IMG/VR virus record: IMGVR_UViG_3300042261_002390
Span: 124,001-188,000 of that record
DNA: 64,000 nt
Reading direction: 5' to 3' (one strand)
The notes beneath the pieces are model-generated. The model saw nothing but the letters and a program-made list of their open reading frames with translations, did not search any database and was not told the origin of the DNA. A program made the translations under genes and the position numbers. Of the stretch, positions 1,601-52,305 are shown piece by piece. Each line of letters opens with the position of its first letter. Position 1 is the stretch's first letter.

Positions 1601-2218
1601 ATGGAATTTAAAAAGAAAGAACTAACTGAAATTATTGGAAGTGATGGCAATTTGATTGGTAATAGTGGCATCCCAACAAACGGTGCTGACCTTGAATCAC
1701 AAGCCAATAATACTACAGATTATAATGCCAAAATCGGAGTACAACCATTCAGGTATGATATGTTGGGTCGATTTGGTTTTACGCTTATGCCGTTTTTAGA
1801 GGGTAAAGAAAGCCAAGAACAACTTGAACTTTTAAAGGATTTGGATGAAATGTTATCCGATGGATATAAAGAAATTCTCGAACATTATTATAAGAATCCA
1901 AATAAGCTTAAATCAGATTATCGTAAACTTGTTGATGGAAAGGGTGAAATTGACCTTGATGGTAGTTCGATTAATTCTAAGAAAATTGTCAAAATTATTG
2001 AAAAGCACTTCGAAAATGCTTTTGATAAAGAACCAAAAACAATTGATGAAGCAGTCGTTGCTGAAGATAAAATGGTTGATAAATCTGAAGATGAAATGAG
2101 TAGAAAGAGCGAAAATAACGATGTTCGTGAAAAGAAGCTTGAAAAGATTGCCGGGTTGATAAATAAGCTTGATAAAAAAGATATTGATAAGCTTATGACT
2201 TTGCTGGAAGTTAAATAA
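1601..2218 (+). CDS. Hypothetical protein, possibly head-internal
   Basis: 205-aa ORF after the late motif, with acidic/IxE-type segments (TIDEA, VAED). Confidence 0.75.
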   Translation: MEFKKKELTEIIGSDGNLIGNSGIPTNGADLESQANNTTDYNAKIGVQPFRYDMLGRFGFTLMPFLEGKESQEQLELLKDLDEMLSDGYKEILEHYYKNPNKLKSDYRKLVDGKGEIDLDGSSINSKKIVKIIEKHFENAFDKEPKTIDEAVVAEDKMVDKSEDEMSRKSENNDVREKKLEKIAGLINKLDKKDIDKLMTLLEVK

Positions 2219-2246
2219 ATTTTATACGTAAAAACATATAATATTA

Positions 2247-3026
2247 ATGGCAAATTCACAATTATACGGAAATACATATAAAATCCCTTCTGAGGTCTTA
2301 AAAACTATTCAAGCAACACTTGTATCAAAACCATCGGGCGAAGGTGTCAGAAGGGCTAAATTCATGCTTAAAAACGGTGTTATCTCTTATCAGGCAATGA
2401 AGAGATTAAAAAATTATTTTGATTATTATAATCCACAAACTGACGATAAAATTCAATACGCATTAGCAGGAGGTGATTTAATGAAATCATTCATTGATAG
2501 AACATTAAATGCTAATAGGGATGCTGTTCAACGTTCGAAAGATGTACGTCGAGATATGACAACTAATCCAAATTCAGAGTTGAAACCATATCAAACACCC
2601 AGACTTAATGAAAATGAGAAAAAAAAGAAGCCTAAAGAAAACGCTATTGCAGTAATTGTTGACAATGATAATAAAATTTTGTTGTTAAAACGTGCAGATG
2701 AACCCGGGACTTGGATGCCGAATAAATATGCTTTTGTTGGTGGTGGTATTGAAAAGGGTGAAACTCCTGAAGAAGCATGTAAACGTGAAATACAGGAAGA
2801 AACAAAACTAGATATTGATAAATTTATCAAATCGTTCAGTATTCAAAAGCATGAAAGTAGTATTGAGTATGTTTTCGTATGTAGATATACTGGTGAACCT
2901 ACTGATGTTGAATTAAACGATGAGAATACTAATTATGGATGGTTTAGTATTTCTGAAATAGAATATCTTGATATTGTACCTCATTTAATGGAATATTTGA
3001 CAATTATTTTTAAAGAATATGAATAA
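2247..3026 (+). CDS. Nudix hydrolase with N-terminal phage domain
   Basis: Nudix box GGGIEKGETPEEACKREIQEETKL in the C-terminal half. An RLNENE linker precedes the domain. Confidence 0.9.
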   Translation: MANSQLYGNTYKIPSEVLKTIQATLVSKPSGEGVRRAKFMLKNGVISYQAMKRLKNYFDYYNPQTDDKIQYALAGGDLMKSFIDRTLNANRDAVQRSKDVRRDMTTNPNSELKPYQTPRLNENEKKKKPKENAIAVIVDNDNKILLLKRADEPGTWMPNKYAFVGGGIEKGETPEEACKREIQEETKLDIDKFIKSFSIQKHESSIEYVFVCRYTGEPTDVELNDENTNYGWFSISEIEYLDIVPHLMEYLTIIFKEYE

Positions 3027-3029
3027 TGT

Positions 3030-3333: not shown

Positions 3334-3573
3334 ATGAGTAGACTTGAAGAAATTAATGCACAATACAGAACTTGTAGTACTGCAAGGAATGATTACAACA
3401 ATAATGACGAATATACCGCAGGTAACCCTGACGCATTATCAACTGGTGATGAAAAAGGTAAGGGTGAAGTGAATGGTCAGGTTGGTAGTGCGACAGACAT
3501 TAAAGTAAGACAAACTTTGATGACCAAAAATAAATTTAATAAGAATAAAGAATACAACGCAGGTACTGCATAA
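3334..3573 (+). CDS. Hypothetical protein
   Basis: 79-aa ORF, GTATTTATA at 3294-3302, coupled to the next gene (TAATG). Confidence 0.75.
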   Translation: MSRLEEINAQYRTCSTARNDYNNNDEYTAGNPDALSTGDEKGKGEVNGQVGSATDIKVRQTLMTKNKFNKNKEYNAGTA

Positions 3574-4523
3574 TGTCAGAAGAAAAGAAAATACTGTTCG
3601 AAAACATTAAAATTTTCCGTCACATAATAAATGAGGCTGTTGGCGGTGATGCTGCTATTCTTGATGCTATTGAGAATCATGAATGGATATATCTATATTA
3701 TGCCGGGGATGAAAATAGTGCAAAAGGATATCGTACAATCAGACCCTATGTTTTAGGTACAAACAAAAGTGGTAATAAGGTATTAAGAGCATGGCAAGAC
3801 AATAAAAAAAATAGCTGGCATTTTGATAATAAACCAACTAGAGATGATAGCAAGTATCATGATTATTGGACTGACCATGAGGGTGAAAAACCGGGATGGA
3901 GAATGTTTCGTGTTGATAAAATATCCCAAATATTACCGATTGGTAGAAAATTTGTGGATAGTAATGGGAATGTCATGATTCCTTCAGGATATCGTGAAGG
4001 TGACGATGATAACATGACATCAATAATTGCATATGTTTCAACAGATAGAGAACCTGAAGAAAAAATAACACATGCATTTGATGCTGCAGTTGGCGAACCT
4101 GAACAAACAAGCGGAATTAATTGGAATAGTATTGCAAGGGGTAATAAAAATCGAAGAAAGATAACCAAATACGATGTTGAAACTTTAAGTAGATTAGCTA
4201 CTAAATTTCATAAAAGAAGTAAAGGAAATTATGTGGTAGTTATTGATGATAAAAACCAATTTCAATTATTAACTCAAAACCAATTAAATAGTTCAGCTAA
4301 AAAGGGCATTACAATTCCAGATAATGCTATTGTTGGTAGATTGTCAAATTTATATGATACTTTAGTTCGAGGAAAAAATGAACCTGTCGATGATACTTGG
4401 TTCAAAAATCAAAAACAAGGCAGTCAAATGCCGGAACGAACAACACAAGAACCTCAAAACGAAATAAAGGAAAATAATTTACCATCAATTCCATTCGATA
4501 AAAAGTCTTTTTTCAAACAATAA
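3573..4523 (+). CDS. WYL-domain protein
   Basis: IYLYY...GYRTIRPYVLG...VLRAWQ...GWRMFRVDKI fits the WYL SH3-like pattern. No HTH seen. Confidence 0.75.
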   Translation: MSEEKKILFENIKIFRHIINEAVGGDAAILDAIENHEWIYLYYAGDENSAKGYRTIRPYVLGTNKSGNKVLRAWQDNKKNSWHFDNKPTRDDSKYHDYWTDHEGEKPGWRMFRVDKISQILPIGRKFVDSNGNVMIPSGYREGDDDNMTSIIAYVSTDREPEEKITHAFDAAVGEPEQTSGINWNSIARGNKNRRKITKYDVETLSRLATKFHKRSKGNYVVVIDDKNQFQLLTQNQLNSSAKKGITIPDNAIVGRLSNLYDTLVRGKNEPVDDTWFKNQKQGSQMPERTTQEPQNEIKENNLPSIPFDKKSFFKQ

Positions 4524-4555: not shown

Positions 4556-5218
4556 ATGGCAAATGTTATTAATTTAAATAAACTCAGAGATGAGATAGAT
4601 AATCGAAAGAAAGAAAAAAATATTCCGACAACACCAACAAGTAGTGGTCAGGTAGGTGCGTCGCCACGTCATGCATTTTTAAATGGATTGCTTGAATCGA
4701 TTAATACGGGTAGAGAAACAAATGCAAGTGCATTAATAAAAACTGTTGAAAATAAGGTTGCTGAAAAAAATGGTGAAACACCTAAAATTAGTGCTCCTAG
4801 AAGTATTCAAACTGAACAAGCACCTCGTCATATTCCACAAAGAATTAATGAAGTTGAAATGTCACCAGAAAGGGATGAGCAATTATTTGTTGATTTAGAG
4901 AAAAGAAGAAATAAGACATTGGCTGAGTCGATTGCATCATATTCTCATGCACCAATGGTCGGTGCACCAATGAATAATCAAGTGCAACCCACGAATATCA
5001 ATGAAGGTTATTTGGTTGAAAATGTAAAAAAAATTATCGACAATTATTTGGTTGAAAATTTTGCTCCTGTCATTGAAGAAACAATAAAAAGTACTATTAT
5101 TGAAATGTATGCCGTTGAAAGAATTAAAGAAGTACTTCACGAAAATAAAGATTTGATTCGAACGGTTGTAATTGAAACTATCAGGGAAATACAAGCAAAA
5201 TCAAAAGCAAAAGGATAG
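4556..5218 (+). CDS. Hypothetical protein, possibly head-internal
   Basis: 220-aa ORF after GTATTTATA (4525-4533), with repeated INE/LVE motifs. Confidence 0.75.
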   Translation: MANVINLNKLRDEIDNRKKEKNIPTTPTSSGQVGASPRHAFLNGLLESINTGRETNASALIKTVENKVAEKNGETPKISAPRSIQTEQAPRHIPQRINEVEMSPERDEQLFVDLEKRRNKTLAESIASYSHAPMVGAPMNNQVQPTNINEGYLVENVKKIIDNYLVENFAPVIEETIKSTIIEMYAVERIKEVLHENKDLIRTVVIETIREIQAKSKAKG

Positions 5219-5227: not shown

Positions 5228-5256
5228 AAAAGCGCAATAAGAATTGCGCTTTTTTT
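5228..5256 (+). terminator. Intrinsic terminator
   Basis: AAAAGCGCAAT-aaga-ATTGCGCT-TTTTTT hairpin plus U-tract. Confidence 0.85.
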
Positions 5257-5259
5257 ATC

Positions 5260-6583: not shown

Positions 6584-9500
6584 ATGACATACGAAGAATT
6601 CAGAGAAAAATTTTTACCAGAATTTAGTAAAATCAGGACATTTGCGGGAAAAATTAGATATGCAGACCAATACTTAACTAAAATAGGTGCTGGAACTGGT
6701 CGTGCTGTTTATGATATTGACGGCAGTAAGGTATTAAAAGTTGCTAAAAATCCCAAAGGCGTTGCTCAAAATGAAGTTGAAGCACCACTTGGTGATGATT
6801 ATTATATTAAAGATGTTGTTACTGAAGTATTTGATAGTGCCGATGATGATAGCTGGATAATTGCAGAAAAAGCAAAAAAGGTTAATGAAAGTAGAATTAA
6901 ACAATTAACTGGTATACCAAGTTTGGTTAGATTATATACATTTTTAAAATATGTTTATGAACAAAGTGTAAAACCAAATCGAAATAACCCAACTAGATTA
7001 AATCAAAATGAAATAGATTTTTTTTATGAAAATGAATTTGCTTCTGGTTTGGCTGATTTAATTGGTAGTTATGAACATTCGTATGGTGATATGGGTAGAC
7101 CAAGCAGTTATGGCGAAGTTTTGCGTAATGGTCAACCAACAATAGTTTTAACTGATTATGGATTGAACGATGAGGTATATTCACAACACTATGATAGAAG
7201 TAGAAAAAAAGGGTATCGTATGTATGAATTATATCAGTTTGCTGATGGTAATGATGACATGCTTTCAGATATTGGTAATACCGGGGAAGTTCGTCATGTT
7301 ATGTGGGCACAAGTACCATATAGCGTAGGTGATGGTGATGGCGTTATTAATGAAGAATTTGTACATTTTGTATCGAATCGTGACTATTATCCTGAAAAAC
7401 CTTTGGAAACAATGCCATATTTGGTTGAAAATTTCCACGAATGTATTAATAATTTGAAGGAAGCATTAAATGTTGCAAAGGATAAGAAACATTTTTATAG
7501 TAATTTATTGAAACTCCAAGAATATTTAACTAATCAAGGTTGGTTTAATAGAGAACCACTTGGTGAGTTATACGAGGTTGATAATAAAAAAATTAATGAA
7601 AGTTTAGATATTAAATTAGCTAATGAGGTTGCATTGGAAGTTGCACAGATTAAAGGTTTTAATGAGCCTAAATACTTAGGTTCTGGCAATTTTGGTGTTG
7701 CTTATGATATTGGTGATGGTAAGGTGTTAAAAATTACTACAGACCATACGGAAGCTAATGAAAATATAGGTTTATTAGGTAAACCATTAAAATATATTGC
7801 AAAACCATTTAATGTATATAAAATCGAATCAGAAAGTGGTAGAGTTGATGACGATACTTATGCAATAGTACTTGAAAAACTTCAAACTGATGTTGAAAAA
7901 TTTACTAAATTAAGACAGCGATTAGATTATGCGTTTGGTAAAATATTGGATTTAAGTCTTGCTGATGTTTTGGCTGATTATGTTGCTGATTATATTAATC
8001 CCGGGGATATGAGAAGAATTGAAGCTTATATGAAGAAGAACCCAATAGATGCTGAATTTTTCTATAGTTTGATTCATATTGCTGATGAAGCTAAATCATA
8101 TGGTGTTGATAGTATTGATTACATTAACCCGAAAAATCTCGGCTATATGCCTAGTGGAGCGATTGGTTTTTTTGATGTTGGATTTGGTAATGCATTCGTA
8201 CAACCCGACATACCAAAAATGAGTATTGGCGAAGATGGCGCAGCTAAATTTTCACAGACCGATTCTATTGGTCGTGATGATTTTCCAACATATGACCAAG
8301 ATAACGGCGATGACCCTATTGAGAACAATCTTGACGCTAATTCGGCAAATTATGTTGACGAAAGAGAAATGAAGTTCATGCCAAAAAGTAAGGGTGTTGA
8401 AGTTAAGAAGAAATGTAGATTAGGCGGGTTAGGTAATACTAGTGCAGCATGTAATCAAGGAGATATTAGTAATTTGAATATCAGTAGATTAGATGAAATT
8501 AATATCAGACATAATGAAACCGTTTGGGGTTGGGTATCACCAAATAACGAATTTATACGTGTTCCTAAACTAAATCATAGGGGATATATCATGAGAGTAT
8601 ATAAGGACTATGAATATAGCTGGGATTATGATAGAGTGTTTGATAAAGCAATTGAAGACGGATGGGTTAGAGTAATTTATGAATATTTCTCAGATAAATT
8701 TCGTGGCGAATTATCATTAAACGGATACGATAAAGATAGGGTGATTTCCGTATTTAAAACAATGTTTTATGATTTAGTTAAATATGGTGGTAATAGCATT
8801 TATTTGGAATATGAAAATCCTAAAGGCTATGATAGTTTTTATGCTGGCAATACTGAAGGTAGAAAAAAATTAAATGATTTTATTGGTATTACTGAAACAA
8901 TTAATGAAGAAATCCATGCTGATGATGCTAAGGAATATAACGATGCTATGCAAGCTATGCTTGATGGTAAAAAGGATGTATCAACAATTGCATTTAAAAT
9001 CAGACCTGCTTTGCGTGATGTTGTAACTCAAAATGATTTTGGTTTAATCCCGGTACAACAGGAAAGAAGTAATGTCGATATGAATATCGTTTATCGTAAA
9101 ACTTCAAGGGGTGAAGCTAATGCAAAACGATTGTATCAAATTATGATGAAACATGGTGGTTATGCTGCAGACCAAACACCTGATGAAGCACGTGAGATTG
9201 GTATGTTATTGGATTATAGTAATGATTCGATTAATCAATATATTGAAAATAAGTATGTTAATAAAATAGATGAAGGTATTTTTGACGATTTTGAAACTAG
9301 ATTCAGAGCACATAAAATAAGTAATGTTGAAAATGTGATATACCGTGAGTCTGATGGATATTTTATAATAAAAAATCCGAAATCATTACAACATATTACT
9401 CATAACGTTCGTGGTGTTATTACATCTTCAGGTGATTTATATGTGGAAAATTATGTGAAAAAAGTGCATAGTACTATTTTAATGATACTGAGTGATTTAG

Positions 9501-11950
9501 GTATCATTCAATATGTTGAGGGATGGACACGAGTGCTGCCGAATGAATTTATTACAGTTACACGGTATAAAAACACTAATAATTTTTTTGCTGGTGAATC
9601 AAATATAATGTTAAGCCAAGATGATAAAAGAATTTCAGGAAATTGGAATGGTGTAGCTGATTATCAAGAATCTTTAAGACTGTTTCAAAGTTATATGAAT
9701 AAGGCTAAAGATAAGAATCCTGACATAAATTTTTATCCTGAAAAAATAAACGATTATGATGATTCATACAATGGATTGAAGGGCTTATATTTTGAAGGTG
9801 TCGGTGATACTTATGTTGAAAAGAAATTTGGCATTGAACCTGAATTTTCTGATTTTGAAGATAAATATAATTCAGCACAAAATTATAAAGATAGGGACAA
9901 GGTGGTATATAACGATGGTAAAGGTCTTGTCATAATAAAAAATCCTAAGAATTTAGATAATATCGGATATGGCGTTAGAGGTATTATTGACAAATATGGT
10001 AATTTATATGTTGAACAAAAATCGAAAGTAATACATGATAAGATTTTGAAGATATTAACTGAATTGGGATTAATTAAATATAATATAAATTGGCGATATG
10101 AGATTCCTACTGAGTTTATTACTGTGCATAGAAATTATCACAAGAATCAATTTTTACTTGGTGATTCTAATGACATGATGATTCCTGATGAATATAGGAG
10201 TGAATATCAAAAGGATATTTTGCCTAGTTTTTCTGAAGCAGAACCAGTATTTAATACATTTATTGAAAAAGCAAAACAAGTTAATCCTGATATTGATTTC
10301 AGTACAGACCTTATTGATGGCTATGTAAAATTCAATACTAATGAGGGTGTTGGTGACAAATATGCTGAGAAGAAATTTGGTGTTGAGCCAGAATTTTCTG
10401 ATTTTGAAAAAAGATATGCATCAAAACAGAATGTTGAACAAGAAGAGGTGGTATACCAAGATAATGAATTGATTTTAATTAAAAACCCTAAATCATTGGA
10501 ACATATCGGCTCAAATGTAAGAGGTGTTGTTGATAAAGAAGGTAATTTGTATGTTGAACAAGAAGTTGGAAATATACATGAAGATATTTTAAAAATACTA
10601 AATAGTTTAAACTTAATTAGATATCAAAATAATTGGGAAAGGAAAATTCCTTCAAATTATATAACAGTTCAAAGATATTATAATACTGATTTATTTTATT
10701 TGGGCGAATCAAATGAAACAATGCTCCCTGATGAAGATAGATTTGAAGACCATAATGCAGCTAGATATGTAGATGCAAAACCAGTGTTTCAACAGTTCAT
10801 TCATCGTGCAAAACAAAAGAATCCTAAAATTAAGTTTATTAATGATATGTTGACTGTTTATCAGGATTATAATGAATCAGTGGAAAAATTTGATAATAAT
10901 TTTGGTTTGTATTCAGAAAATACTATCTTTGCTGATGAAAATTTAGATGAAACTTTAGGTGAGTTGGATAAATACTACGTGAAAACTGGTATATATGACG
11001 ACGAAGACCGTGATGTGATTTTATCGATAACGAATGGTGATAATTGGACAAAGCTTATTGCTGACATGTATTATTATCTTGGAGATAGGTATAATAAGCA
11101 AATGGTTGAACCGAGAAAATTAAATGATAATGAAATCACGTATCTTAAAAATACACATGAATTATTGAAGGCGTATGATAAAAATGTATTACCAATTCAT
11201 GACTTATTTGCTCGTGAACATAATGCACATGCTCTTGAAAAAATGAATGACCTTAATACTAGGAATGTTATACTGAAGAAACTTAAACAGATTCCAAGTG
11301 TATATCTTCGTAATTTAAGAGCTGATTTGAGAAAGGAAAGAGACCATTATGAATTTGATAGTTTGTTGAAAAACATTAATTCAATTCTTAATTCAATGAG
11401 AGTTCTGAATAATGTTAATGCTGAAAGAGCTAATTTAATTTTAAAGAAAGTTTTTTCAAATGAGAACGATACTTTTGAAAAGATTAAAGAAAGATTTGAT
11501 AATATATTTATACCATATTTGTCACAAGATGAACCGATTGAGGAAATTTTAGATAATATTAAGTATTGGAAAGATGAAGTGGAATTGTTATATAATAAGA
11601 ACGACGTTGTTGCTGTTAAAATAATGAGTGCTGAAGCAATGACAGCATTTGGTTGTAGTTCACAATGGTGCTTTGCAAGAGATACTGGTTGGTGGGATAA
11701 TTATGCTGAATATGGGTTTGCAACAATTGTATATAACTTTAATTTAGACCCTAGTGACCCTAAAAGAATGGTCGTGGTTTTAGATAATGGTAATGTATAT
11801 AACATGTATAATGAGTACATGGATGAAGGTATTGAATATTTGGAAGAAATTGGTGTATATGATTATATGCCGACATCGGATGAATATGAACACGAGTTTG
11901 ATAGCGAAGTGAATGAAAATATTGAAGAGGCTAGAAAATTAATAATTTGA
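6584..11950 (+). CDS. 1788-aa polyvalent protein: two protein-kinase-like domains, three ~180-aa repeats, C-terminal PcfJ-like domain
   Basis: Kinase 1: IGAGTGRAVY..VLKVAK..E..DMGR..LTDYG. Kinase 2: LGSGNFGVAY..VLKIT..E..DYINPKNLG..FFDVG. C-terminal AMTAFGCSSQWCFA..WWDNY resembles PcfJ-like domains. Confidence 0.8.
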   Translation: MTYEEFREKFLPEFSKIRTFAGKIRYADQYLTKIGAGTGRAVYDIDGSKVLKVAKNPKGVAQNEVEAPLGDDYYIKDVVTEVFDSADDDSWIIAEKAKKVNESRIKQLTGIPSLVRLYTFLKYVYEQSVKPNRNNPTRLNQNEIDFFYENEFASGLADLIGSYEHSYGDMGRPSSYGEVLRNGQPTIVLTDYGLNDEVYSQHYDRSRKKGYRMYELYQFADGNDDMLSDIGNTGEVRHVMWAQVPYSVGDGDGVINEEFVHFVSNRDYYPEKPLETMPYLVENFHECINNLKEALNVAKDKKHFYSNLLKLQEYLTNQGWFNREPLGELYEVDNKKINESLDIKLANEVALEVAQIKGFNEPKYLGSGNFGVAYDIGDGKVLKITTDHTEANENIGLLGKPLKYIAKPFNVYKIESESGRVDDDTYAIVLEKLQTDVEKFTKLRQRLDYAFGKILDLSLADVLADYVADYINPGDMRRIEAYMKKNPIDAEFFYSLIHIADEAKSYGVDSIDYINPKNLGYMPSGAIGFFDVGFGNAFVQPDIPKMSIGEDGAAKFSQTDSIGRDDFPTYDQDNGDDPIENNLDANSANYVDEREMKFMPKSKGVEVKKKCRLGGLGNTSAACNQGDISNLNISRLDEINIRHNETVWGWVSPNNEFIRVPKLNHRGYIMRVYKDYEYSWDYDRVFDKAIEDGWVRVIYEYFSDKFRGELSLNGYDKDRVISVFKTMFYDLVKYGGNSIYLEYENPKGYDSFYAGNTEGRKKLNDFIGITETINEEIHADDAKEYNDAMQAMLDGKKDVSTIAFKIRPALRDVVTQNDFGLIPVQQERSNVDMNIVYRKTSRGEANAKRLYQIMMKHGGYAADQTPDEAREIGMLLDYSNDSINQYIENKYVNKIDEGIFDDFETRFRAHKISNVENVIYRESDGYFIIKNPKSLQHITHNVRGVITSSGDLYVENYVKKVHSTILMILSDLGIIQYVEGWTRVLPNEFITVTRYKNTNNFFAGESNIMLSQDDKRISGNWNGVADYQESLRLFQSYMNKAKDKNPDINFYPEKINDYDDSYNGLKGLYFEGVGDTYVEKKFGIEPEFSDFEDKYNSAQNYKDRDKVVYNDGKGLVIIKNPKNLDNIGYGVRGIIDKYGNLYVEQKSKVIHDKILKILTELGLIKYNINWRYEIPTEFITVHRNYHKNQFLLGDSNDMMIPDEYRSEYQKDILPSFSEAEPVFNTFIEKAKQVNPDIDFSTDLIDGYVKFNTNEGVGDKYAEKKFGVEPEFSDFEKRYASKQNVEQEEVVYQDNELILIKNPKSLEHIGSNVRGVVDKEGNLYVEQEVGNIHEDILKILNSLNLIRYQNNWERKIPSNYITVQRYYNTDLFYLGESNETMLPDEDRFEDHNAARYVDAKPVFQQFIHRAKQKNPKIKFINDMLTVYQDYNESVEKFDNNFGLYSENTIFADENLDETLGELDKYYVKTGIYDDEDRDVILSITNGDNWTKLIADMYYYLGDRYNKQMVEPRKLNDNEITYLKNTHELLKAYDKNVLPIHDLFAREHNAHALEKMNDLNTRNVILKKLKQIPSVYLRNLRADLRKERDHYEFDSLLKNINSILNSMRVLNNVNAERANLILKKVFSNENDTFEKIKERFDNIFIPYLSQDEPIEEILDNIKYWKDEVELLYNKNDVVAVKIMSAEAMTAFGCSSQWCFARDTGWWDNYAEYGFATIVYNFNLDPSDPKRMVVVLDNGNVYNMYNEYMDEGIEYLEEIGVYDYMPTSDEYEHEFDSEVNENIEEARKLII
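9269..10880 (+). repeat. Three tandem diverged ~540-nt domain repeats inside the giant ORF
   Basis: Each copy has IKNPK.L..I...VRG.I...G.LYVE...H..IL..L...W....P...ITV.R...G(E/D)SN. Copies 2 and 3 share EGVGD.Y.EKKFG.EPEFSDFE. Confidence 0.9.
10901..10931 (+). promoter_or_regulatory. Bacteroidota-type promoter embedded in the giant ORF
   Basis: TTTG-N19-TATCTTTG, located in an interdomain linker. Confidence 0.45.
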
Positions 11951-12101
11951 TAAAATTCAAAAAAAGAATATCAATAGAGATTTGAGAAAGTTTAAATACT
12001 TGACATCTATGGGATATACTATATTGTATCTATGGGAATATGATTTAAAACACAATTTAAATGAATGTAAAAATAAATTAAATAGACTGTTATATGAATA
12101 A
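11946..12101 (+). pseudogene. C-terminal relic of a Vsr/DUF559-like endonuclease
   Basis: Start-less frame FDKIQKKNINRDLRKFKYLTSMGYTILYLWEYDLKHNLNECKNKLNRLLYE*. The RD..K...L...GY.IL.LWE.D pattern is typical of Vsr-like nucleases. Not in the ORF track. Confidence 0.75.
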
Positions 12102-13719
12102 GATAAAAAATTTTATAGCTGATTTAAAAACCAAACCGTTTATCAAATCAATGATAAATGATTTGAATGCTGAAGTATATGTTGTTGGTGGTGCAACTAG
12201 AGACCTTATTCTCAATAAAAATAACAAGGATATTGATTTATTAATTAGAAAAATACCAATCGATGTGTTAATATCTCATTTAAAAAATTATGGTAAATTA
12301 GATATTGTGGGTAAATCATTTGGAGTTATTAAGTTTATTGATTCAGATGGCGTTGATTATGATATAGCATTGCCTCGCCGAGAAAAACCAACAGGTGAGG
12401 GTGGACATAAAGACTTTGAAATTCAGAGCGATGAAAATTTACCGATTGAAGTGGATTTGAGTAGAAGGGACGCTAAACTTAATGCAATGGCAATTGATTT
12501 AAACAACGAAAAATTTGTTGACCCTTTGGGTGGTTTGGACGATATTCAAAATAAACAAATATCTGCTGCAAATCCTAATGCATTTTCAGATGACCCACTT
12601 CGTATGTTGAGAATGATTGGTTTTGCAAGTCGATTTGGATTTACGATTGAACCCAGAACAATGGAAATGATTCAAAAAAATGCTGAAAGTATTAAGAGAA
12701 TACCTGCTGAAAGAATTATCGAAGAATTCAAGAAGATTATCGAAAAGGGTAATCCTAGAATTGGTGTTGAACTTTTAGTATCTACCGGGTTATTTAAACA
12801 AATATTTGGTAATGAAATCAAGCAATCACAAATAGATAAGCGTGATTTTGAAAGCGTTAAATCTATGGCTGAGTTTTTATTTTTGATGATGTATGATGTT
12901 GTTCAAAATCCGTCACAATTTTATTTAAGTAAATTTAGTACGGAAGATGCTTTAAGGGATAAAAACTATAAAGAAATAAAAGCATTGGAGTTGGCATTTG
13001 CAAATACCAATAATAATCCAGTGGCTACAAGGTCAGTTGCACATAACATGTATGTAATGTCACCTGTTTCTTTGGAGAGTTCAATTCTTCCTTCTGAGAT
13101 TAAAACTGCAGCACAGGATTTGCTTTCAGGTAGATATCCTAAAACAGTTAATGAATTGGCTGTTAATGGCGGTGATTTAATGCAGTTAGGATTAAAAGGT
13201 AAAGAAGTTGGTGATATGCAAAAGTCATTATTGCTTAAAGTTTATGGCGATAAAGTTCGTAACGATAAGAATAGTTTGCTTGCTGTTGCTAAAGGTGAAG
13301 AACCAAACAACTTAAGTGAGGTTGATGCTAATATTGATAAGAATGTTCTTTATAGTGCAGTTGTGCTTGACGATGAGTCACGTAGCAAATTATTGAAAGT
13401 GGTTCAACCTATGATACCTGATGGTTGGGAAGTTATAGCGCATCACATGACAATCAAAATGGGTGCAATAAACCCCGAAAATCGGGGTGATTTGAATACC
13501 GAAGTAACGCTTGATGTTATTGATTACGCTATCGATGATATGGCATTTGCTGTTGGTGTAAGTGGTTATCCATCCAACAATAAGAAGCCTCATATTACTA
13601 TTGCAATTAATAGACTTGAAGGTGCTAAACCAGTAATGTCTAATAATTTAACTGATTGGAAACCATTAGGTTTTCCATTAAAACTGAAAGGAATTGTTAC
13701 TGAAATTAAACGAAATTAA
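12094..13719 (+). CDS. cca: CCA-adding/poly(A) polymerase-family nucleotidyltransferase fused to a C-terminal 2H phosphoesterase
   Basis: VVGGATRD..KDID, DLSRRD..NAMA, DPLGG..D, FSDDPLRMLR. The C-terminal domain has two HxT motifs (HHMTI, PHITI). Confidence 0.88.
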   Translation: MNKIKNFIADLKTKPFIKSMINDLNAEVYVVGGATRDLILNKNNKDIDLLIRKIPIDVLISHLKNYGKLDIVGKSFGVIKFIDSDGVDYDIALPRREKPTGEGGHKDFEIQSDENLPIEVDLSRRDAKLNAMAIDLNNEKFVDPLGGLDDIQNKQISAANPNAFSDDPLRMLRMIGFASRFGFTIEPRTMEMIQKNAESIKRIPAERIIEEFKKIIEKGNPRIGVELLVSTGLFKQIFGNEIKQSQIDKRDFESVKSMAEFLFLMMYDVVQNPSQFYLSKFSTEDALRDKNYKEIKALELAFANTNNNPVATRSVAHNMYVMSPVSLESSILPSEIKTAAQDLLSGRYPKTVNELAVNGGDLMQLGLKGKEVGDMQKSLLLKVYGDKVRNDKNSLLAVAKGEEPNNLSEVDANIDKNVLYSAVVLDDESRSKLLKVVQPMIPDGWEVIAHHMTIKMGAINPENRGDLNTEVTLDVIDYAIDDMAFAVGVSGYPSNNKKPHITIAINRLEGAKPVMSNNLTDWKPLGFPLKLKGIVTEIKRN

Positions 13720-15436: not shown

Positions 15437-15492
15437 AAATTTGCATTTTTAAAAATAAATACTTTGAGATTTAAAATTATTGGGTTTTGATT

Positions 15493-16098
15493 ATGGAAAA
15501 AAATAAAAATACTCGAAAACGTCTAATAGCCATCGATTTTGACCAATGTTTGGTCAACACCCCTGAAGAAATTCAAGGTAAGAAAACTTGGGAAGAAGTT
15601 AAAGGTGTTCCTTATCCGCATAATGGATGGTGGGGTAGGAAAGAAAGCTTAGATTTGGATGTTTTTGATATAAAACCATATCCTAACGTACTGTCTGTTT
15701 TAAGAAAAGAAAGCAGTAGAAATGATACGTATGTTATTGTTTTAACAGCAAGAATGGAAAAATTGCGTCCATATGTGCAAGCAGTTCTTGATGCAAATAA
15801 CATTAGGGTTGATAAATTGGATATGAAAAGTGATAATAAAACAAAGGGTGAAAGAATATTGGCATATTTAGCTGAGATGCCTGAAATAAAAGAAATTTCA
15901 GTTTTCGATGACCAAGAAAAACATCTTGATTCGTATCGTGAAATTATAGATAAACTACCTAAAGGTGTTAAATTGAATATTTTTAAAACTGATGAGGGTG
16001 TGATTAATTTAGTTGAATCAAAAAATAAACTCAATCATATTATTTCTGATGAAATTGAAAATTTTTTTGATTGTATTTATATTAAAAAAATTCTATGA
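15493..16098 (+). CDS. HAD-family phosphatase (Swiss-Army-knife RNA-repair HAD-like)
   Basis: IDFD..LVNTP, WW...ESL, VLTAR, K, VFDD motifs. Confidence 0.8.
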   Translation: MEKNKNTRKRLIAIDFDQCLVNTPEEIQGKKTWEEVKGVPYPHNGWWGRKESLDLDVFDIKPYPNVLSVLRKESSRNDTYVIVLTARMEKLRPYVQAVLDANNIRVDKLDMKSDNKTKGERILAYLAEMPEIKEISVFDDQEKHLDSYREIIDKLPKGVKLNIFKTDEGVINLVESKNKLNHIISDEIENFFDCIYIKKIL

Positions 16099-20229: not shown

Positions 20230-20233
20230 AGAA

Positions 20234-20659
20234 ATGAGTAGTTTTTTAGATAATTTGAAAAAAGCTGTTGAGACTGGTGAATTTAATTCGGATGCTGCCA
20301 AAAAAATTAATGAAATTTCCGAATTGGCTAGTAATATTACAAAGAGTGAAAAAGAACTTGAAGAATCACTTAACGAGAGATTGCTTAATAGCGGTATTAA
20401 AACAGTTACTGAGGAAGAAGTAAAAACATTTAATTCTGAACATGATGAGAAAATGTCAGCAATTAGAAAACAAGATGCAATTAATCTTGAAATTAAAACA
20501 TTGATTGAAGTTGAAGAAATGGTGGCTTTAACTATTGGTGATATGTTTGAACATCTTAAGTCAGTAAAAGAAAGAAATTCATTGGATGACCCAGCCAACA
20601 GTGATTTGGCTAAGAAAATTGAAGAAATTGAGTTAAAATACAAGTCATTTATTAATTAA
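20234..20659 (+). CDS. Hypothetical coiled-coil protein
   Basis: Helical acidic ORF, likely start ATG 20234. Confidence 0.75.
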   Translation: MSSFLDNLKKAVETGEFNSDAAKKINEISELASNITKSEKELEESLNERLLNSGIKTVTEEEVKTFNSEHDEKMSAIRKQDAINLEIKTLIEVEEMVALTIGDMFEHLKSVKERNSLDDPANSDLAKKIEEIELKYKSFIN

Positions 20660-42070: not shown

Positions 42071-42102
42071 CTTGTATTTAAGAATAAAATTACATAGTTT
42101 TG
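42071..42102 (+). promoter_or_regulatory. Bacteroidota sigma-type promoter
   Basis: CTTG-N20-TAGTTTTG, 17 nt before ATG 42120. Confidence 0.7.
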
Positions 42103-42119
42103 TGAAAAATATTGAAAAG

Positions 42120-46688: not shown

Positions 46689-46868
46689 ATGAATAACAAA
46701 TATAAAATAAAAATTGAAGCACCGCTTATTCGTCCCGGTATTACTATTGAAACAGAATGTAGCGAAAGGTATGTCGTTAAAGTAGTAAATAAGATGATGG
46801 AAATTGTGCGTGAAATAAATGAAGAGTCAAAAACACCACAAAATGGGGAAAGTAACCAACATAATTAA
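46689..46868 (+). CDS. Small hypothetical protein (59 aa)
   Basis: MNNKYKIKIEAPLIRPGITIETECSERYV...QHN*. Fills the gap and is shorter than any ORF in the track. Confidence 0.55.
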   Translation: MNNKYKIKIEAPLIRPGITIETECSERYVVKVVNKMMEIVREINEESKTPQNGESNQHN

Positions 46869-47469
46869 TGAGGAAATTTCGGCAATAACTCAAGATAAGA
46901 AAAAAGAAATTTTTGATTATCATAATATAACTGAAAGTGCTTGGAGGGATATTGTCGATGAAGCACAAGATTTTCAAGGTATTTCATTTGATTTTGAGAA
47001 TAATGACACTACTGGTCAGAAGAAAATATTTTATATTCATAAAGATTTGAGAAAGAATCAACCTATCAAATATCAAATCAATGCTGAATTATTTGAAGCC
47101 GGGGGTGATTGGGAAAATCCTGTAATGTATTTTAGACTTCAATTTGTTCGTGATTATGGTATTGTACATAGCGTTGATGAAAATAAAGATAATGAACCTG
47201 AATATGTTTGGGACATTAAACGGAAAATCAAAAATAGTGGATTGCGCAATTGTTACTGTATTATTCCACCCGTTGAGGCTGGTAATAAATTAAAAGAAGC
47301 TGATAAGAGTAATAAAAAATATAAATGGTTCGCATATCAGAGTAGTGAAATGACGAAAGAAGAAGATAAATTAGCTAGAATTACTCCTGAAGATAAAAAG
47401 AATTGTTGGAAGTGGCTTCAAGAATTATTAGCTAAAGTTGTTGATGAAAGACATAAAATGCTTGATTAG
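46843..47469 (+). CDS. Hypothetical protein, possibly head-internal
   Basis: N-terminal KVTNIINEEI...ITES motif. Confidence 0.75.
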   Translation: MGKVTNIINEEISAITQDKKKEIFDYHNITESAWRDIVDEAQDFQGISFDFENNDTTGQKKIFYIHKDLRKNQPIKYQINAELFEAGGDWENPVMYFRLQFVRDYGIVHSVDENKDNEPEYVWDIKRKIKNSGLRNCYCIIPPVEAGNKLKEADKSNKKYKWFAYQSSEMTKEEDKLARITPEDKKNCWKWLQELLAKVVDERHKMLD

Positions 47470-47490: not shown

Positions 47491-47976
47491 ATGAACGATA
47501 TAAATAAAAAGAATGCATCAAATCAAATGCGAACATTTATAGGCAGAATGCGTAAGGGTTATACTGCAGCAAATGAATCAGTAACTGAGAAAAAAGACTT
47601 AAATGTGCGTGATATGTTAAAAATAACACGTAAATTAAATGAAGAAGTTAGTAATAACCCAATTGACAAAAAAACAGCATATGACCAAGAAAATGAAGAA
47701 AAAAAGCTGTTGAATTATTTTAAGGATATGAATGTAAATATTCGGTTCATACCTCTTGAAGTTTATGATAATTTTGTTTTTTGGGGCGGGACTGTTGATG
47801 GAATGATTCAGTTCGTATTTAAAGTGACTCCTAATGAAAATACTAGTAATGTTGAATTTAATTACTTAGAAGATTTTTCACCGGATAATCCTGAAAACGA
47901 TGAGATTGTGAATAGACTTGAAGCTTATTATGATATTTTTTCAAAATTTTGGCAAGAAAACATGGTTCAACATTAA
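47491..47976 (+). CDS. Hypothetical protein
   Basis: After GTATTTAT at 47469, with ANES/LNEE motifs. Confidence 0.75.
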   Translation: MNDINKKNASNQMRTFIGRMRKGYTAANESVTEKKDLNVRDMLKITRKLNEEVSNNPIDKKTAYDQENEEKKLLNYFKDMNVNIRFIPLEVYDNFVFWGGTVDGMIQFVFKVTPNENTSNVEFNYLEDFSPDNPENDEIVNRLEAYYDIFSKFWQENMVQH

Positions 47977-49822: not shown

Positions 49823-49827
49823 TACAA

Positions 49828-52305
49828 ATGATTGTGAAAAAAATAAATGAAACATCAATAAAACCAACATCAGACAAGCCAGTGAGTGACCAGTCGAGGA
49901 GATTTGAAAAAAAATTTAATAGTACTATGAATCAGTATAATATTAAATTGGATGAAGTGGATGATTTATTAAACGAAGCTGAGTTGTCGCTTAAAAAGAA
50001 AATCTTTAGCTTACCTAAAATGGAAGCATTAGTTTTTTCTGACCCTAAACTTACTACCGTTTATGATGAAATGGCTGAGAATGGTGAAGAACGTTTTGGC
50101 TATCACTATAATGAAACCATTATGAATATGATATTTAACGATTGGGTATTAAACAGTCCTAAATATCTTCAAAAATATAAAATGGCGATTCCAAAGAAAA
50201 AGAAGAGAAGAGATAAAAGTGGTATTAACCAACTCAAAAAAATGGCTAAAACACCTACTCCTTCAATTCAACCACAAACGACTGATGAAACGACTGGTGC
50301 AGCATCATCGGGTGCGTATGCAGGTCCTGCTGCATGGAAAAAAGGTGGCGATTTAATGGAAGAACCAAATAAAGTTGAAGAAACTAGTACATCAGCATCA
50401 TCAGGAGCATATGTTACTCCTGCAGCTTGGGGTTCTGGCGATTTAATGAAAGCCAAAGGTAAAAGTCAAGCAATGCGTAAACCAATATGGCAAGGTGGTA
50501 AGATAATACAAGAAAGTAATTATTTAACTGACCCTGCAGGATTTATGAAATTTATTGATGCATTGAATGAGCAAATAGGTATTGAAGAACCACAAATGGC
50601 TCAAAATCCTAACGTTAAGCCTGATAGTCGTTCTGACGTTAATCGTAAGATTATTGATGGAACTTCTGCTTTTAATAGTGATACTATTAAGGGTTGGGGA
50701 AAGGATGACACTAATATTCAGTATAATACGATGAAAACTGGTAAAGTAGACAACCCTAATTTTCAACATATGGAAGAAGAAATAATGGATGAAAAGGCAA
50801 AATCAAAAGCACAACAACGTTTATTCGGTATGGCTCATGCTGTGCAAAAAGGCGAATTAAGTCCGAGTAAGGTTGGCGGTGATGTTAAAAAAATTGCAAA
50901 AACAGTGAGTGCAAAAGATGTTGAAGATTTTGCATCAACAAAACATAAAAAATTACCTGAAAAGGTCGATGAATTAGCGTTAAATGAATTTCTAAGTCTA
51001 CATGATATTGTTGAATATGTATCAGATAGAAATGGTGAAGAACCTTTCGAAATGCATGGCGATAAATGGCAGTTTGTTAACGGTAAATATCCTAATGGTA
51101 AGGTGGATATTGCTGTTTATCGATACGGCACTGATTTAGCATATGATTATGAAAGATGGAGAGAAGAAATGAACATTAATGAAACAGACCAATCAATGAT
51201 AGGAGATACACAAAGTACTATGGCAAATAAACCACAAGCAACAGGTACAGTTACTACTGGTGGTGTTCCAGTAGGATTGACCGACATGAAAGAAAATTAT
51301 AATTTGTTGGAAGAAATTGATAATGAATTGAATGCATACTCAATTCATCAGAATAAACTAAAGAAAATTGCTGAAGATAGGAAACCATCAGCATTAGTAT
51401 TAAAAGACCGTCTGGGTGCTGAAAATGCAACTAATTTCAAAAAAGATTTAGGTCAGAGCGGTACTAAAGACATTATTAATGTTGAAAAAGAATTGATGTA
51501 CAAAGACCAGCAAACAGATGTAGGGGATGACCCACAAAAACTTGGTCAGGATATTGAAAAGAAAGCATTACAGGTAACCAAAGGTAAGTCATTCGATAAT
51601 GTTGGAGACTCAACTAATGATAAGGGTAATGAAATTCCTAAGCGTAATTTGACTAGTGAGGAACAAGACGAAGTTAATATGTATCGTTTAGGACAGCAAG
51701 ATTTGGTTTATGATAATAAACCAAGTGAACGTTTTGAAGAACGTATGAAAGCTGATATGGGTGATACTTTATATAAACAAAGACAAGAAAAACTTGATTT
51801 CAGAGCTAAAGCACCAATGTATAACAAAGATACACAACCAACTGAAGAAGGTATTGAAAAATCACAATTTGATAAAAATAAATCTGGCTGGAATGAAAGA
51901 ACTGGATTGGAAGAATCTATGGTTACTGGTAGATATCGTGATGCTTTGAATAAGAGTCATATTATTGACTTCACAATAAACGAAGCATTAGCTATGACCC
52001 CGGGAAGCGAAGAATCATTATTTAAATTAGATTTTACTGGTTTGGGTAATATGTATATGAGCAAAACTGAAAACTATAAAGTAAGTATGAATGAAGGCGT
52101 AGTTGAGGTACTTAATTTGCATGATTTTTATACTGATGGGAAGAATGTTTATTTCGTAAAAAATAATGCACAGAATTTGAGCGAAAGTGAAGTAAAATCG
52201 ACAAATGTAGTTAACGAAAATGTTGAAAAAATGAAACATTTATTGGGTTACAATCCAAATAGGTTTGTTAATACTAATAATATAAAAAAGAATAGAGGTT
52301 TTTAA
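49828..52305 (+). CDS. Large putative head-internal protein containing a DUF3008-like module
   Basis: AKSKAQQRLFGMAHAVQKG...DVEDFASTKHKKLP, duplicated ETT.A.SSGAY..PAAW, many (L/I)xE linkers. Confidence 0.7.
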   Translation: MIVKKINETSIKPTSDKPVSDQSRRFEKKFNSTMNQYNIKLDEVDDLLNEAELSLKKKIFSLPKMEALVFSDPKLTTVYDEMAENGEERFGYHYNETIMNMIFNDWVLNSPKYLQKYKMAIPKKKKRRDKSGINQLKKMAKTPTPSIQPQTTDETTGAASSGAYAGPAAWKKGGDLMEEPNKVEETSTSASSGAYVTPAAWGSGDLMKAKGKSQAMRKPIWQGGKIIQESNYLTDPAGFMKFIDALNEQIGIEEPQMAQNPNVKPDSRSDVNRKIIDGTSAFNSDTIKGWGKDDTNIQYNTMKTGKVDNPNFQHMEEEIMDEKAKSKAQQRLFGMAHAVQKGELSPSKVGGDVKKIAKTVSAKDVEDFASTKHKKLPEKVDELALNEFLSLHDIVEYVSDRNGEEPFEMHGDKWQFVNGKYPNGKVDIAVYRYGTDLAYDYERWREEMNINETDQSMIGDTQSTMANKPQATGTVTTGGVPVGLTDMKENYNLLEEIDNELNAYSIHQNKLKKIAEDRKPSALVLKDRLGAENATNFKKDLGQSGTKDIINVEKELMYKDQQTDVGDDPQKLGQDIEKKALQVTKGKSFDNVGDSTNDKGNEIPKRNLTSEEQDEVNMYRLGQQDLVYDNKPSERFEERMKADMGDTLYKQRQEKLDFRAKAPMYNKDTQPTEEGIEKSQFDKNKSGWNERTGLEESMVTGRYRDALNKSHIIDFTINEALAMTPGSEESLFKLDFTGLGNMYMSKTENYKVSMNEGVVEVLNLHDFYTDGKNVYFVKNNAQNLSESEVKSTNVVNENVEKMKHLLGYNPNRFVNTNNIKKNRGF

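What the first reader, a model, noticed from the sequence alone, without database searches (positions are those of the whole stretch)
1601..52305. Shared (L/I)NE / IIxEEI signature marks a family of putative head-packaged enzymes across the window
The same linkers occur beside enzyme domains in other genes: RLNENE before the Nudix domain, HIINEA before WYL, NLSEV between CCA and 2H, LVESKNKLNHIISDEI at the HAD C-terminus, IKEN before the ART-like domain, NIINEEI in 46843, and many in 49828. Most of these genes follow the GTATTTAT motif. Inference: a late-expressed, capsid-targeted set of counter-defence enzymes.
Basis: inference. Interest (0 to 1): 0.6.

Follow-up and report, generated by a model that had tools for sequence, protein, structure and literature searches.

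The report
Capsid-targeting tags on jumbo-phage enzymes
An uncultured T4-related jumbo phage carries short (L/I)-x-E tags, matching the likely cut site of its own head protease, on many unrelated late proteins and enzymes, so they are probably loaded into the capsid as T4 internal proteins are; no virion data exist yet.

Summary
The quoted peptides exist, and the core signature exceeds chance. [LI]NE occurs 111 times against 63 expected in the 246-kb genome, and the excess lies at residues 6-30 and in genes behind the GTATTTAT motif.

The genome encodes a T4 gp21-type prohead protease. Its major capsid protein has an invariant INE at residues 58-60, near where T4 gp23 is cut.

Two portable tags contain the motif:
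- A leader of about 25 residues with a K-x-R-L-F-E-x-M core ending in [LIV]NE, found on about 10 unrelated proteins here and 30 across five genomes.
- A short IIxEEI helix at protein termini, 19 observed against 2.65 expected.

In three large families, L/I and E are fixed while the middle residue varies, as expected for a T4-type (L/I)xE site.

In the window, the WYL-like gene (3573), 46843, 49828, the Nudix linker, the end of the CCA module, 1601, 4556 and 47491 carry conserved sites. IKEN lies in a conserved core and is uninformative. The HAD C-terminal helix matches the second tag only loosely in this genome.

Capsid targeting with protease processing is the best explanation (about 0.6). 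It is inferred, not shown. Packaging of the individual enzymes is less certain.

The parts
1577..1584 (+). GTATTTAT promoter-like motif 24 nt before gene 1601. Other copies before window genes are at 3294, 4525, 16073, 17342, 21208, 26119, 30842, 35782, 36595, 37741, 47469, 48833, 52982, and on the minus strand at 15455.
   Evidence: Genome-wide the same motif precedes the terminase, portal, scaffold-like and large tail-like genes.
1601..2218 (+). 205-aa protein of unknown function whose 10-residue N-terminal peptide ends in LTE (nt 1622-1630). It is a candidate T4-like short capsid-targeting sequence.
   Evidence: In 87 of 87 homologs that have the downstream anchor, the preceding tripeptide is [LIVM]xE. 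It sits at residues 8-10 in 84 of them, with 12 different middle residues.
2247..3026 (+). N-terminal domain of about 118 aa, a linker, then a Nudix hydrolase domain (residues 132-241). The LNE is at residues 120-122 (nt 2604-2612).
   Evidence: Pfam NUDIX E 1e-20. [LIM]xE is kept in 14 of 14 homologs inside an indel-rich linker. Related Nudix domains are fused to portal or head proteins in Burkholderia phages.
3573..4523 (+). 316-aa protein made of a class-1 leader (residues 1-21, nt 3573-3635, ending INE), a WYL-like beta-barrel and a C-terminal domain.
   Evidence: Leader HMM hit. 263 homologs; E21, R16 and E4 are invariant in a 30-sequence alignment. The leader ends in [LIV]xE in 109 of 120 homologs. 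WYL is weak in Pfam, but all top fold hits are WYL proteins.
4556..5218 (+). 220-aa protein with INE at residues 148-150 (nt 4997-5005), after a variable linker and before a conserved C-terminal helix.
   Evidence: [LIM]NE is kept in 5 of 5 genomes.
6584..11950 (+). 1788-aa giant multi-module protein with INE sites at residues 255, 337 and 773 (nt 7346-7354, 7592-7600, 8900-8908). In relatives G002 and G003 the orthologous giant protein also contains the CCA module.
   Evidence: The INE at about residue 255 is kept in 4 of 4 genomes. The linker site and the C-terminal [LI]xE are kept in most.
12094..13719 (+). CCA-adding/poly(A) polymerase-family nucleotidyltransferase joined to a 2H-like phosphoesterase. 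The LSE at residues 407-409 (nt 13312-13320) lies at the joint.
   Evidence: Pfam and PHROGs. All four genomes that have the module show LSE, LNE, IKE or LNE at the module end, while the sequence after it differs. The 2H part is a separate gene in G001, G002 and G005.
15487..16098 (+). HAD phosphatase of the RNA-repair type with a C-terminal helix IISDEI (nt 16039-16056). Orthologs in G001 and G003 end with the exact class-2 hexapeptide.
   Evidence: In this genome D replaces E at the position that would be cut.
16095..16910 (+). 271-aa protein with a ParB-N-like N-terminal domain and a possibly ART-like C-terminal part. IKEN (residues 171-174) lies in an invariant core segment.
   Evidence: The ART-PolyVal resemblance is only a feature-based lead (score 0.83).
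20213..20659 (+). 148-aa protein with INE at residues 32-34 (nt 20306-20314), kept as I-x-E in orthologs and followed by a variable stretch.
   Evidence: 3 of 3 orthologs.
46843..47469 (+). 208-aa protein of unknown function with the class-2 tag IINEEI at nt 46861-46878. The likely true start is 46843, not 46819.
   Evidence: 106 homologs: IINEEI in 60, and II-x-EEI with a varying third residue in most others, at residue 7. The Atlas record starts at residue 9 of the longer ORF.
47491..47976 (+). 161-aa protein with a conserved N-terminal region of about 50 aa ending in LNE (nt 47635-47643), followed by an indel-rich linker.
   Evidence: 4 of 4 orthologs. GTATTTAT lies 22 nt upstream.
49828..52305 (+). 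825-aa modular protein with six [LI]NE sites at nt 49843, 49969, 50563, 50980, 51175 and 51976 (each 9 nt long), a DUF3008 module and a conserved C-terminal domain. It is a candidate processed internal-head polyprotein.
   Evidence: 6 sites against 0.59 expected. All six are kept as [LI]xE in a homolog whose best-matching segment is 59% identical, even where the modules between them are swapped. Three of six are kept in all four distant genomes.

Best explanation
The window belongs to an uncultured jumbo phage of about 340 kb, distantly related to T4 and probably infecting Bacteroidota.

Proposed mechanism:
- Its gp21-type prohead protease most likely cuts after Glu in (L/I)-x-E. In this genome the preferred form is (L/I)-N-E.
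- Two portable tags containing that site direct otherwise unrelated late proteins into the prohead, as the T4 capsid-targeting sequence does for the internal proteins and Alt.
- Tag 1 is an N-terminal helix of about 25 residues with a K-x-R-L-F-E-x-M core, ending in the site.
- Tag 2 is a short II-x-EE-I helix at the extreme N- or C-terminus.
- Larger multi-module proteins (49828, the giant 6584 protein with the CCA module, and the Nudix protein) carry the same site at module joints. They would be cut into pieces inside the head.
- The cargo would then be delivered with the DNA.

Shown: the protease gene, the motif statistics, its position in proteins, its conservation, and its association with the promoter-like motif.

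Inferred: cleavage, targeting, presence in virions, and any counter-defence role.
For: - Protease: Peptidase_S77 at 72 bits, and PHROG head maturation protease at E 4e-39.
- Head module order is terminase, portal, protease, scaffold-like protein, capsid protein.
- Capsid protein: INE at residues 58-60 is invariant in five genomes. A T4-like gp23 has LTE at 63-65 and shares an FENQ segment in the propeptide. The 65-residue T4 propeptide is from PMC5694885.
- Class-1 leader: 9 HMM hits in this genome and 30 in five genomes, all at N-termini. A tenth, weak LKE-ending match at genome 7760 brings the count here to about 10. The mature parts share no detectable homology.
- Class-1 cargo includes GP88, DUF5661, a weak metallopeptidase match and the WYL-like protein.
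- Class-2 tag: 19 observed against 2.65 expected, concentrated at termini. Its carriers fall into at least eight groups with no BLAST-detectable similarity to one another. Codon use follows the genome, so selection acts on the protein. One carrier is an ART-PolyVal domain at E 8e-17.
- P3 and P1 are fixed and P2 is free in three large families.
- Density in GTATTTAT operons is 1.83 against 1.11 per 1000 aa, with the shuffle expectation about 0.8. The N-terminal site occurs in 15 of 104 against 10 of 197 genes (p 0.008). The direction is the same in all five genomes.
- T4 precedent: a 10-residue targeting sequence with processing determinants at residues 8 and 10, and Alt cut at both ends (ITE-6 and LTE-619) (PMC9026906, PMC5694885).
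Against: - There is no virion proteome, no N-terminal sequence and no cultured close relative. The nearest isolate capsid protein is 34% identical.
- Generic [LI]xE and [LI]NE sites are only slightly better conserved than control tripeptides. Individual internal sites cannot be called from conservation alone.
- About 60% of [LI]NE copies are expected by chance.
- The leaders show no evident similarity to the T4 targeting sequence.
- GTATTTAT also precedes a repair exonuclease gene.
- The protease-substrate complex prediction gave no verdict.
- The 3573 and 1601 proteins are highly conserved core proteins. That fits structural or core roles as well as, or better than, fast-evolving counter-defence cargo.
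Confidence: 0.6

Rival explanations
1. Compositional chance. In a 31% GC genome I, L, N, E and K are the commonest residues, so (L/I)NE and II-x-EE-I strings arise without function.
For: Amino-acid composition. 63 to 77 copies of [LI]NE are expected by chance. Many window copies are not conserved, with 1 of 4 orthologs keeping the site in TnpB, tail and replication proteins. IKEN and similar strings fit only the loose pattern.
Against: Shuffle tests give z 6.6 overall and 0 of 500 for residues 16-30. The hexapeptide is 19 observed against 2.65 expected, with 12 at N-termini. L/I and E stay invariant with a free middle residue across hundreds of homologs.
Confidence: 0.07
2. The tags are short linear motifs that bind a shared partner unrelated to the capsid, such as a chaperone, a clamp-like hub or an assembly factor. 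On this view their resemblance to the protease site is coincidental.
For: The class-2 tag is an amphipathic helix, often followed by an aromatic-acidic patch. In this genome's HAD protein, D replaces E at the would-be cut position. Nothing here shows cleavage.
Against: The same tripeptide ends the class-1 leaders, sits at the capsid-protein maturation position and near the protease N-terminus, and is enriched in late-motif operons next to head genes. A pattern of fixed P3 and P1 with free P2 is typical of a protease site rather than a binding helix.
Confidence: 0.15
3. The sites are real protease sites, but the carriers are mainly scaffold or core components that are degraded and expelled during maturation. 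On this view they are not delivered enzymes, and the enzyme examples (Nudix, CCA-2H, HAD) are cytoplasmic proteins with fortuitous or unrelated conserved linkers.
For: Several carriers are acidic, low-complexity proteins lying beside head genes: genome 5177, 7760, 70694, and parts of 49828. T4 gp22, gp67 and gp68 behave this way (PMC5694885). RNA-repair enzymes work well from the cytoplasm.
Against: Carriers with clear enzyme or ligand-binding domains exist: ART-PolyVal, GP88, the WYL-like protein and a weak metallopeptidase match. Nudix domains fused to portal proteins occur in other phages. The CCA module sits inside giant multi-module proteins bounded by the motif.
Confidence: 0.18

Closest known systems
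T4 internal proteins IPI-III and Alt, with their capsid-targeting sequence and gp21 processing
   Same: Both have a gp21-family protease and an (L/I)xE cut site. Both use short N-terminal propeptides on otherwise unrelated cargo. The 1601 family has the fixed residues at positions 8 and 10, exactly as in the T4 targeting sequence. C-terminal propeptides are also known in T4 (Alt). The genes are late genes near structural genes (PMC9026906, PMC5694885).
   Different: The leader sequences are not evidently similar to those of T4. There are two tag classes, one of about 25 residues. The cargo includes Nudix, a WYL-like protein, RNA-repair modules and giant multi-module proteins. There is no experimental evidence.
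Ejection and inner-body proteins with propeptides in phiKZ, 201phi2-1 and SPN3US
   Same: Both involve jumbo phages with a diverged gp21-like protease that cuts after Glu. Many head proteins are processed, some at several sites, and propeptides are thought to target cargo (PMC5694885, PMC9026906).
   Different: Those phages use small residues (S/A/G) at P3 and long propeptides of 100-160 residues. Here P3 is L/I. The short tags are portable and recognisable by sequence.
Polyvalent proteins of phages and conjugative elements (Iyer et al. 2017)
   Same: Both involve multi-domain proteins with ART-PolyVal, ParB-like, metallopeptidase and Nudix-linked domains, encoded near virion genes and predicted to be packaged and injected (PMC5512222).
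   Different: Here many domains are separate genes, each with its own tag, and the large proteins carry conserved protease-type sites at module joints. In the passages of that paper I searched, no shared targeting tag or prohead-protease site at module joints came up.
Portal-Nudix and head-protein-Nudix fusions in Burkholderia phages (Bcep781 group, BcepB1A)
   Same: A related Nudix domain is physically attached to a head morphogenesis protein.
   Different: There the attachment is by gene fusion. Here it would be through a separate N-terminal domain and a cleavable linker.

Membership tests
T4-type prohead-protease substrates and capsid-targeting sequence | The phage encodes a gp21-family (Peptidase S77) prohead protease | tested here: met
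   PF03420 at 72.1 bits against a cut-off of 27. phrog_207 at E 4e-39.
T4-type prohead-protease substrates and capsid-targeting sequence | An (L/I)xE motif at the N-terminal maturation position of the major capsid protein | tested here: met
   INE at residues 58-60 is invariant in 5 of 5 genomes, 17 residues before the conserved VIRR segment. A T4-like gp23 has LTE at 63-65. Cleavage itself is not shown.
T4-type prohead-protease substrates and capsid-targeting sequence | A short N-terminal propeptide ending in the motif, shared by otherwise unrelated proteins | tested here: met
T4-type prohead-protease substrates and capsid-targeting sequence | Sequence similarity of the tag to the T4 IPIII targeting sequence | not tested
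   No T4 IP sequence was fetched. Only the positional parallel (fixed residues 8 and 10) was seen in the 1601 family (PMC9026906).
T4-type prohead-protease substrates and capsid-targeting sequence | Protein present in virions with the propeptide removed; the tag is sufficient to package a reporter | not testable with these tools
   Needs virion mass spectrometry and genetics in a cultured relative.
phiKZ-type processed head proteins | A cleavage motif with S/A/G at P3 (S/A/G-x-E) | tested here: not met
   P3 is L/I (rarely V/M) in all conserved sites.
Polyvalent proteins | Several conflict-type enzymatic domains in one polypeptide, encoded with virion genes | tested here: inconclusive
   The giant protein plus CCA and 2H modules form one ORF in G002 and G003. 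However, Pfam finds no domain in the 1788-aa window protein. ART-PolyVal is found only in a relative's single-domain protein.
NUDIX hydrolase | Pfam NUDIX domain above the gathering score | tested here: met
   74.2 bits against 21.1.
WYL domain | Pfam WYL above the gathering score, or the WYL fold | tested here: inconclusive
   19.7 bits against 21.8. Some homologs carry PF13280. All top PDB fold hits are WYL proteins, but with E 5e-3 to 5e-2 on a model of pLDDT 62.
ADP-ribosyltransferase (gene 16095) | Match to an ART family or fold | tested here: inconclusive
   No Pfam hit. There is only a 0.83 feature-based lead to an ART-PolyVal cluster. The N-terminal part resembles ParB-N.

The most novel reading that the evidence does not exclude
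This phage clade pre-loads its capsid with a ready-made toolkit: a CCA-adding enzyme, a 2H phosphoesterase, a HAD phosphatase, a Nudix hydrolase, a WYL-like ligand or DNA binder and ART-type enzymes. The toolkit is addressed by two portable sequence tags. It is released from single proteins and giant precursors by the prohead protease at (L/I)xE joints. RNA repair and nucleotide-signal hydrolysis would therefore begin at the moment of DNA entry, before any phage gene is expressed.
Probability: 0.25. Interest if true: 0.8.

Novelty: new variant of a known kind. Interest (0 to 1): 0.6.

Why it matters
- Capsid-targeting sequences are documented experimentally only for T4 and inferred for phiKZ-like phages.
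- A recognisable, portable tag in a large uncultured clade of freshwater jumbo phages would let the injected proteome be predicted from sequence alone. The three protein families searched have 106 to 611 homologs each.
- It would point to which enzymes act at the first moment of infection.
- It would give a handle for packaging foreign proteins in a non-enterobacterial phage.
- It would turn the proposed delivery of polyvalent proteins into a testable cleavage-and-packaging model.

Tried and rejected
- Megablast of 6.5 kb against isolated phages found no match.
- The 3573 protein has no relative in isolated phages.
- The search for related loci with the CCA protein found nothing. It was replaced by searching four complete related genomes through handles.
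- A genome-wide test that [LI]xE or [LI]NE sites are better conserved than control tripeptides gave only weak separation: 0.40 against 0.19-0.45. Conservation alone is therefore not used as proof for single internal sites.
- Complex prediction of the protease with the first 60 residues of the 3573 protein gave no verdict. It is not evidence either way.
- The Atlas search for the 46819 protein gave no usable hit, and its model is poor.
- Ribosomal protein bS21, which marks a published clade of Bacteroidetes jumbo phages (PMC9723584), was not found in this 75%-complete record. Membership in that clade is therefore not claimed.
- The N-terminal INE of the minus-strand gene 58578-59348, and LNE sites in TnpB, tail and replication proteins, are not conserved and are treated as chance.
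- The reads tools were not used. No alternative genetic code was needed.
Full report
**What the window is.**
- The 64-kb window is bases 124001-188000 of a single 246,149-bp virus record with 31% GC, estimated 75% complete.
- Proteins identical to the window's occur on a contig of 339,914 bp, so the full genome is probably about 340 kb.
- The genome has a T4-like head module. It runs large terminase, portal, a 259-aa protein, a gp21-family prohead protease (Peptidase_S77, 72 bits), a 540-aa acidic scaffold-like protein, then the major capsid protein.
- The nearest isolated relative by capsid protein is a Flavobacterium phage at 34% identity.
- Four complete related jumbo genomes of 322-365 kb were fetched whole for comparison.
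- The window itself encodes these genes:
  - a Nudix hydrolase;
  - a WYL-like protein;
  - a TnpB/IS605 OrfB-like gene;
  - a 1788-aa giant protein;
  - a CCA-adding enzyme joined to a 2H-like phosphoesterase;
  - a LAGLIDADG homing endonuclease;
  - an RNA-repair-type HAD phosphatase;
  - baseplate and probable fibre genes;
  - an exonuclease and a primase;
  - a fused Mre11-Rad50.

**Check of the observation.**
- Every quoted string is present.
- [LI]NE occurs 111 times in the genome against 63.3 in per-protein shuffles (z 6.6). Against a dipeptide-aware expectation of 76.5 the z is about 3.9. [LI]KE and [LI]NK are at expectation.
- [LI]NE is the most over-represented [LI]xE tripeptide in four of the five genomes.
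- The excess is positional. Residues 16-30 of predicted proteins hold 15 copies against 4.1 expected (0 of 500 shuffles), and residues 6-15 hold 8 against 2.8.
- The 49828 protein holds six copies against 0.59 expected.
- The loose pattern [LI]xE is nearly uninformative: 978 copies against 824 expected. As a class it is not better conserved than control tripeptides.

**Two portable tags.**
- The N-terminal copies fall into recognisable families.
- *Class 1* is a leader of 19-27 residues with a K-x-R-L-F-E-x-M core ending in [LIV]NE.
  - An HMM built from seven leaders and searched against the six-frame translation found further members. After one iteration it found 30 genes in the five genomes (9, 7, 6, 4 and 4), all at N-termini. 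A tenth, weak match at genome 7760 brings the count in this genome to about ten.
  - The mature parts of the ten carriers in this genome share no detectable similarity.
  - They include a GP88 domain, DUF5661, a weak HExxH metallopeptidase match, several acidic low-complexity proteins, and the window's 3573 protein.
  - Only 3573-4523 lies in the window.
  - The hexapeptide [LI][LI]NE[ED][LIV] occurs 19 times in the five proteomes against 2.65 expected. Twelve lie in the first 30 residues against 0.48 expected, and three lie at extreme C-termini.
  - Its carriers fall into at least eight groups with no BLAST-detectable similarity to one another.
  - Its codons follow genome usage, so selection acts on the peptide rather than the DNA.
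  - One carrier in a relative is an ART-PolyVal domain at E 8e-17.

**Link to the protease.**
- The capsid protein has INE at residues 58-60, invariant in all five genomes. It lies 17 residues before the conserved VIRR segment.
- A T4-like gp23 fetched for comparison has LTE at 63-65 before AEIGG, and shares an FENQ segment in the propeptide. T4 gp23 loses a 65-residue propeptide (PMC5694885).
- The protease itself has I/L-x-E at about residue 32 in all five genomes.
- In T4 the first 10 residues of IPIII are sufficient for packaging, with processing determinants at residues 8 and 10. Alt is cut at ITE-6 and at LTE-619 (PMC9026906, PMC5694885).
- Three large families searched here show the same logic:
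  - In the 1601 family, 87 of 87 anchor-bearing members have [LIVM]-x-E, at residues 8-10 in 84 of them, with 12 different middle residues.
  - In the 3573 family, the leader ends in [LIV]-x-E in 109 of 120 members, mostly LTE or ITE. INE or LNE is the variant seen in this genome.
  - In the 46843 family, II-x-EE-I sits at residue 7 with a variable third residue.
- Fixed P3 and P1 with a free P2 is what a T4-type protease site predicts.

- *RLNENE (Nudix).* [LIM]-x-E is kept in 14 of 14 homologs inside an indel-rich linker between a conserved 118-aa N-terminal domain and the Nudix domain. Related Nudix domains are fused to portal or head proteins in Burkholderia phages.
- *HIINEA.* This is the end of a genuine class-1 leader. 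The protein behind it has a WYL-like barrel. Pfam is just below threshold, and all top fold hits are WYL proteins on a model of moderate confidence.
- *NLSEV.* It is not [LI]NE. However, the end of the CCA module carries LSE, LNE, IKE or LNE in all four genomes that have it, while the sequence after it differs. In G002 and G003 the CCA module lies inside giant proteins of 2247 and 1810 aa that are orthologous to the window's 6584-11950 protein. In G001, G002 and G005 the 2H part is a separate gene.
- *Giant protein.* It has a conserved INE at about residue 255 (4 of 4 genomes) and further sites at module joints.
- *HAD C-terminus.* Orthologs in two relatives end with the exact class-2 hexapeptide. 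This genome has IISDEI, with D at the would-be cut position.
- *IKEN.* It lies inside an invariant core segment and is uninformative. The ART-like call for that protein is only a lead, and its N-terminal part looks ParB-like.
- *NIINEEI.* This is a class-2 tag, and the start codon is probably 46843.
- *49828.* All six sites are kept as [LI]-x-E in a homolog whose best-matching segment is 59% identical. This holds even where the modules between them, including DUF3008, have been replaced.

**The promoter-like motif.**
- GTATTTAT is enriched in the window, 22 copies against 9.35 expected.
- It extends to roughly GTATTTATAwAAAA and sits 22-30 nt before start codons.
- It precedes the terminase, portal, scaffold-like and large tail-like genes, and five of the class-1 genes.
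- It is present 77-133 times in each of the five genomes.
- In all five genomes, [LI]NE density is higher in operons behind it. Here it is 1.83 against 1.11 per 1000 aa, with the shuffle expectation about 0.8.
- N-terminal sites are two to six times more frequent in those operons. Here they occur in 15 of 104 against 10 of 197 genes (p 0.008), and the difference is significant in four of the five genomes.
- The motif also precedes a repair exonuclease gene, so it is not exclusive to virion genes. Its late timing is inferred.

**Interpretation and limits.**
- The most economical reading is a T4-type system. A gp21-family protease has an (L/I)xE specificity, portable targeting tags end in that site, and multi-module precursors are cut at module joints.
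- This matches the prediction that polyvalent proteins are packaged in the capsid and injected with the DNA (PMC5512222).
- Nothing here shows cleavage or presence in virions.
- About 60% of [LI]NE copies are expected by chance, so single internal sites remain uncertain.
- Several carriers look like core or scaffold material rather than enzymes.
- The 3573 and 1601 families are strongly conserved core proteins, which is not typical of fast-evolving counter-defence cargo.
- I put about 0.6 on the tag-plus-protease mechanism. I put about 0.35-0.45 on packaging of the specific enzymes (Nudix, CCA-2H, HAD).

**Novelty.**
- The mechanism is of a known kind: the T4 capsid-targeting sequence and the phiKZ-type propeptides.
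- The new elements are two sequence-recognisable tags, the cargo set, and the protease-type joints in giant proteins, all in a large uncultured clade.
- I found no description of them in the papers searched.

Noticed in passing
window 5244-6545 (+): A TnpB/IS605 OrfB-like gene (Cas12f1-like TNB, OrfB_IS605 and HTH domains) sits inside the phage genome. A GTATTTAT lies at 5289, so the true start is probably downstream of the TTG at 5244. Orthologs at 26-43% identity exist in three related genomes.
   Followed up: partly
window 14423-15436 (-): A LAGLIDADG homing endonuclease on the opposite strand, with its own GTATTTAT at 15455-15462, is inserted between gene 13756 and the HAD gene. It has no syntenic ortholog in most relatives.
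   Followed up: partly
window 42072-45452 (+): Mre11-like phosphoesterase and Rad50 (with zinc hook) are fused in one 1126-aa ORF, which is conserved at 60-66% identity in all four relatives.
   Followed up: partly
window 12094-13719, and G001-G003, G005 (L030-L037): The CCA-adding module, the 2H module and the giant protein are shuffled among relatives. They form one 1810-aa or 2247-aa ORF in two genomes and separate genes in the others.
   Followed up: yes
window 49828-52305, residues 155-175 and 186-206: There are two copies of a repeat with an SSGAY core followed by a PAAW core. They are found nowhere else in the genome and are kept in the homolog. The DUF3008 module at residues 324-380 is replaced by unrelated sequence in relatives, and is otherwise found in Synechococcus phages.
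   Followed up: partly
genome 26231-27688 (L003:6231-7688), outside the window: A Mom-like DNA modification domain is fused to a GIY-YIG/homing-endonuclease domain directly after the capsid gene.
   Followed up: no
genome 24462-26144 (L003:4462-6144): The capsid-protein propeptide shares an FENQ segment with T4-like gp23. The class-1 leaders have a similar LFE core, so the leaders may mimic the part of the capsid propeptide that contacts the core.
   Followed up: no
window 53006-53758 (+): This protein has an HHTVSG segment and conserved orthologs, suggesting a cell-wall amidase. Its N-terminal LNE at residue 35 is kept in only 2 of 3 orthologs.
   Followed up: no
whole record G000: IMG/VR labels the record a provirus. 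However, it has the gene content of a lytic T4-like jumbo phage and appears to be a fragment of a genome of about 340 kb.
   Followed up: partly
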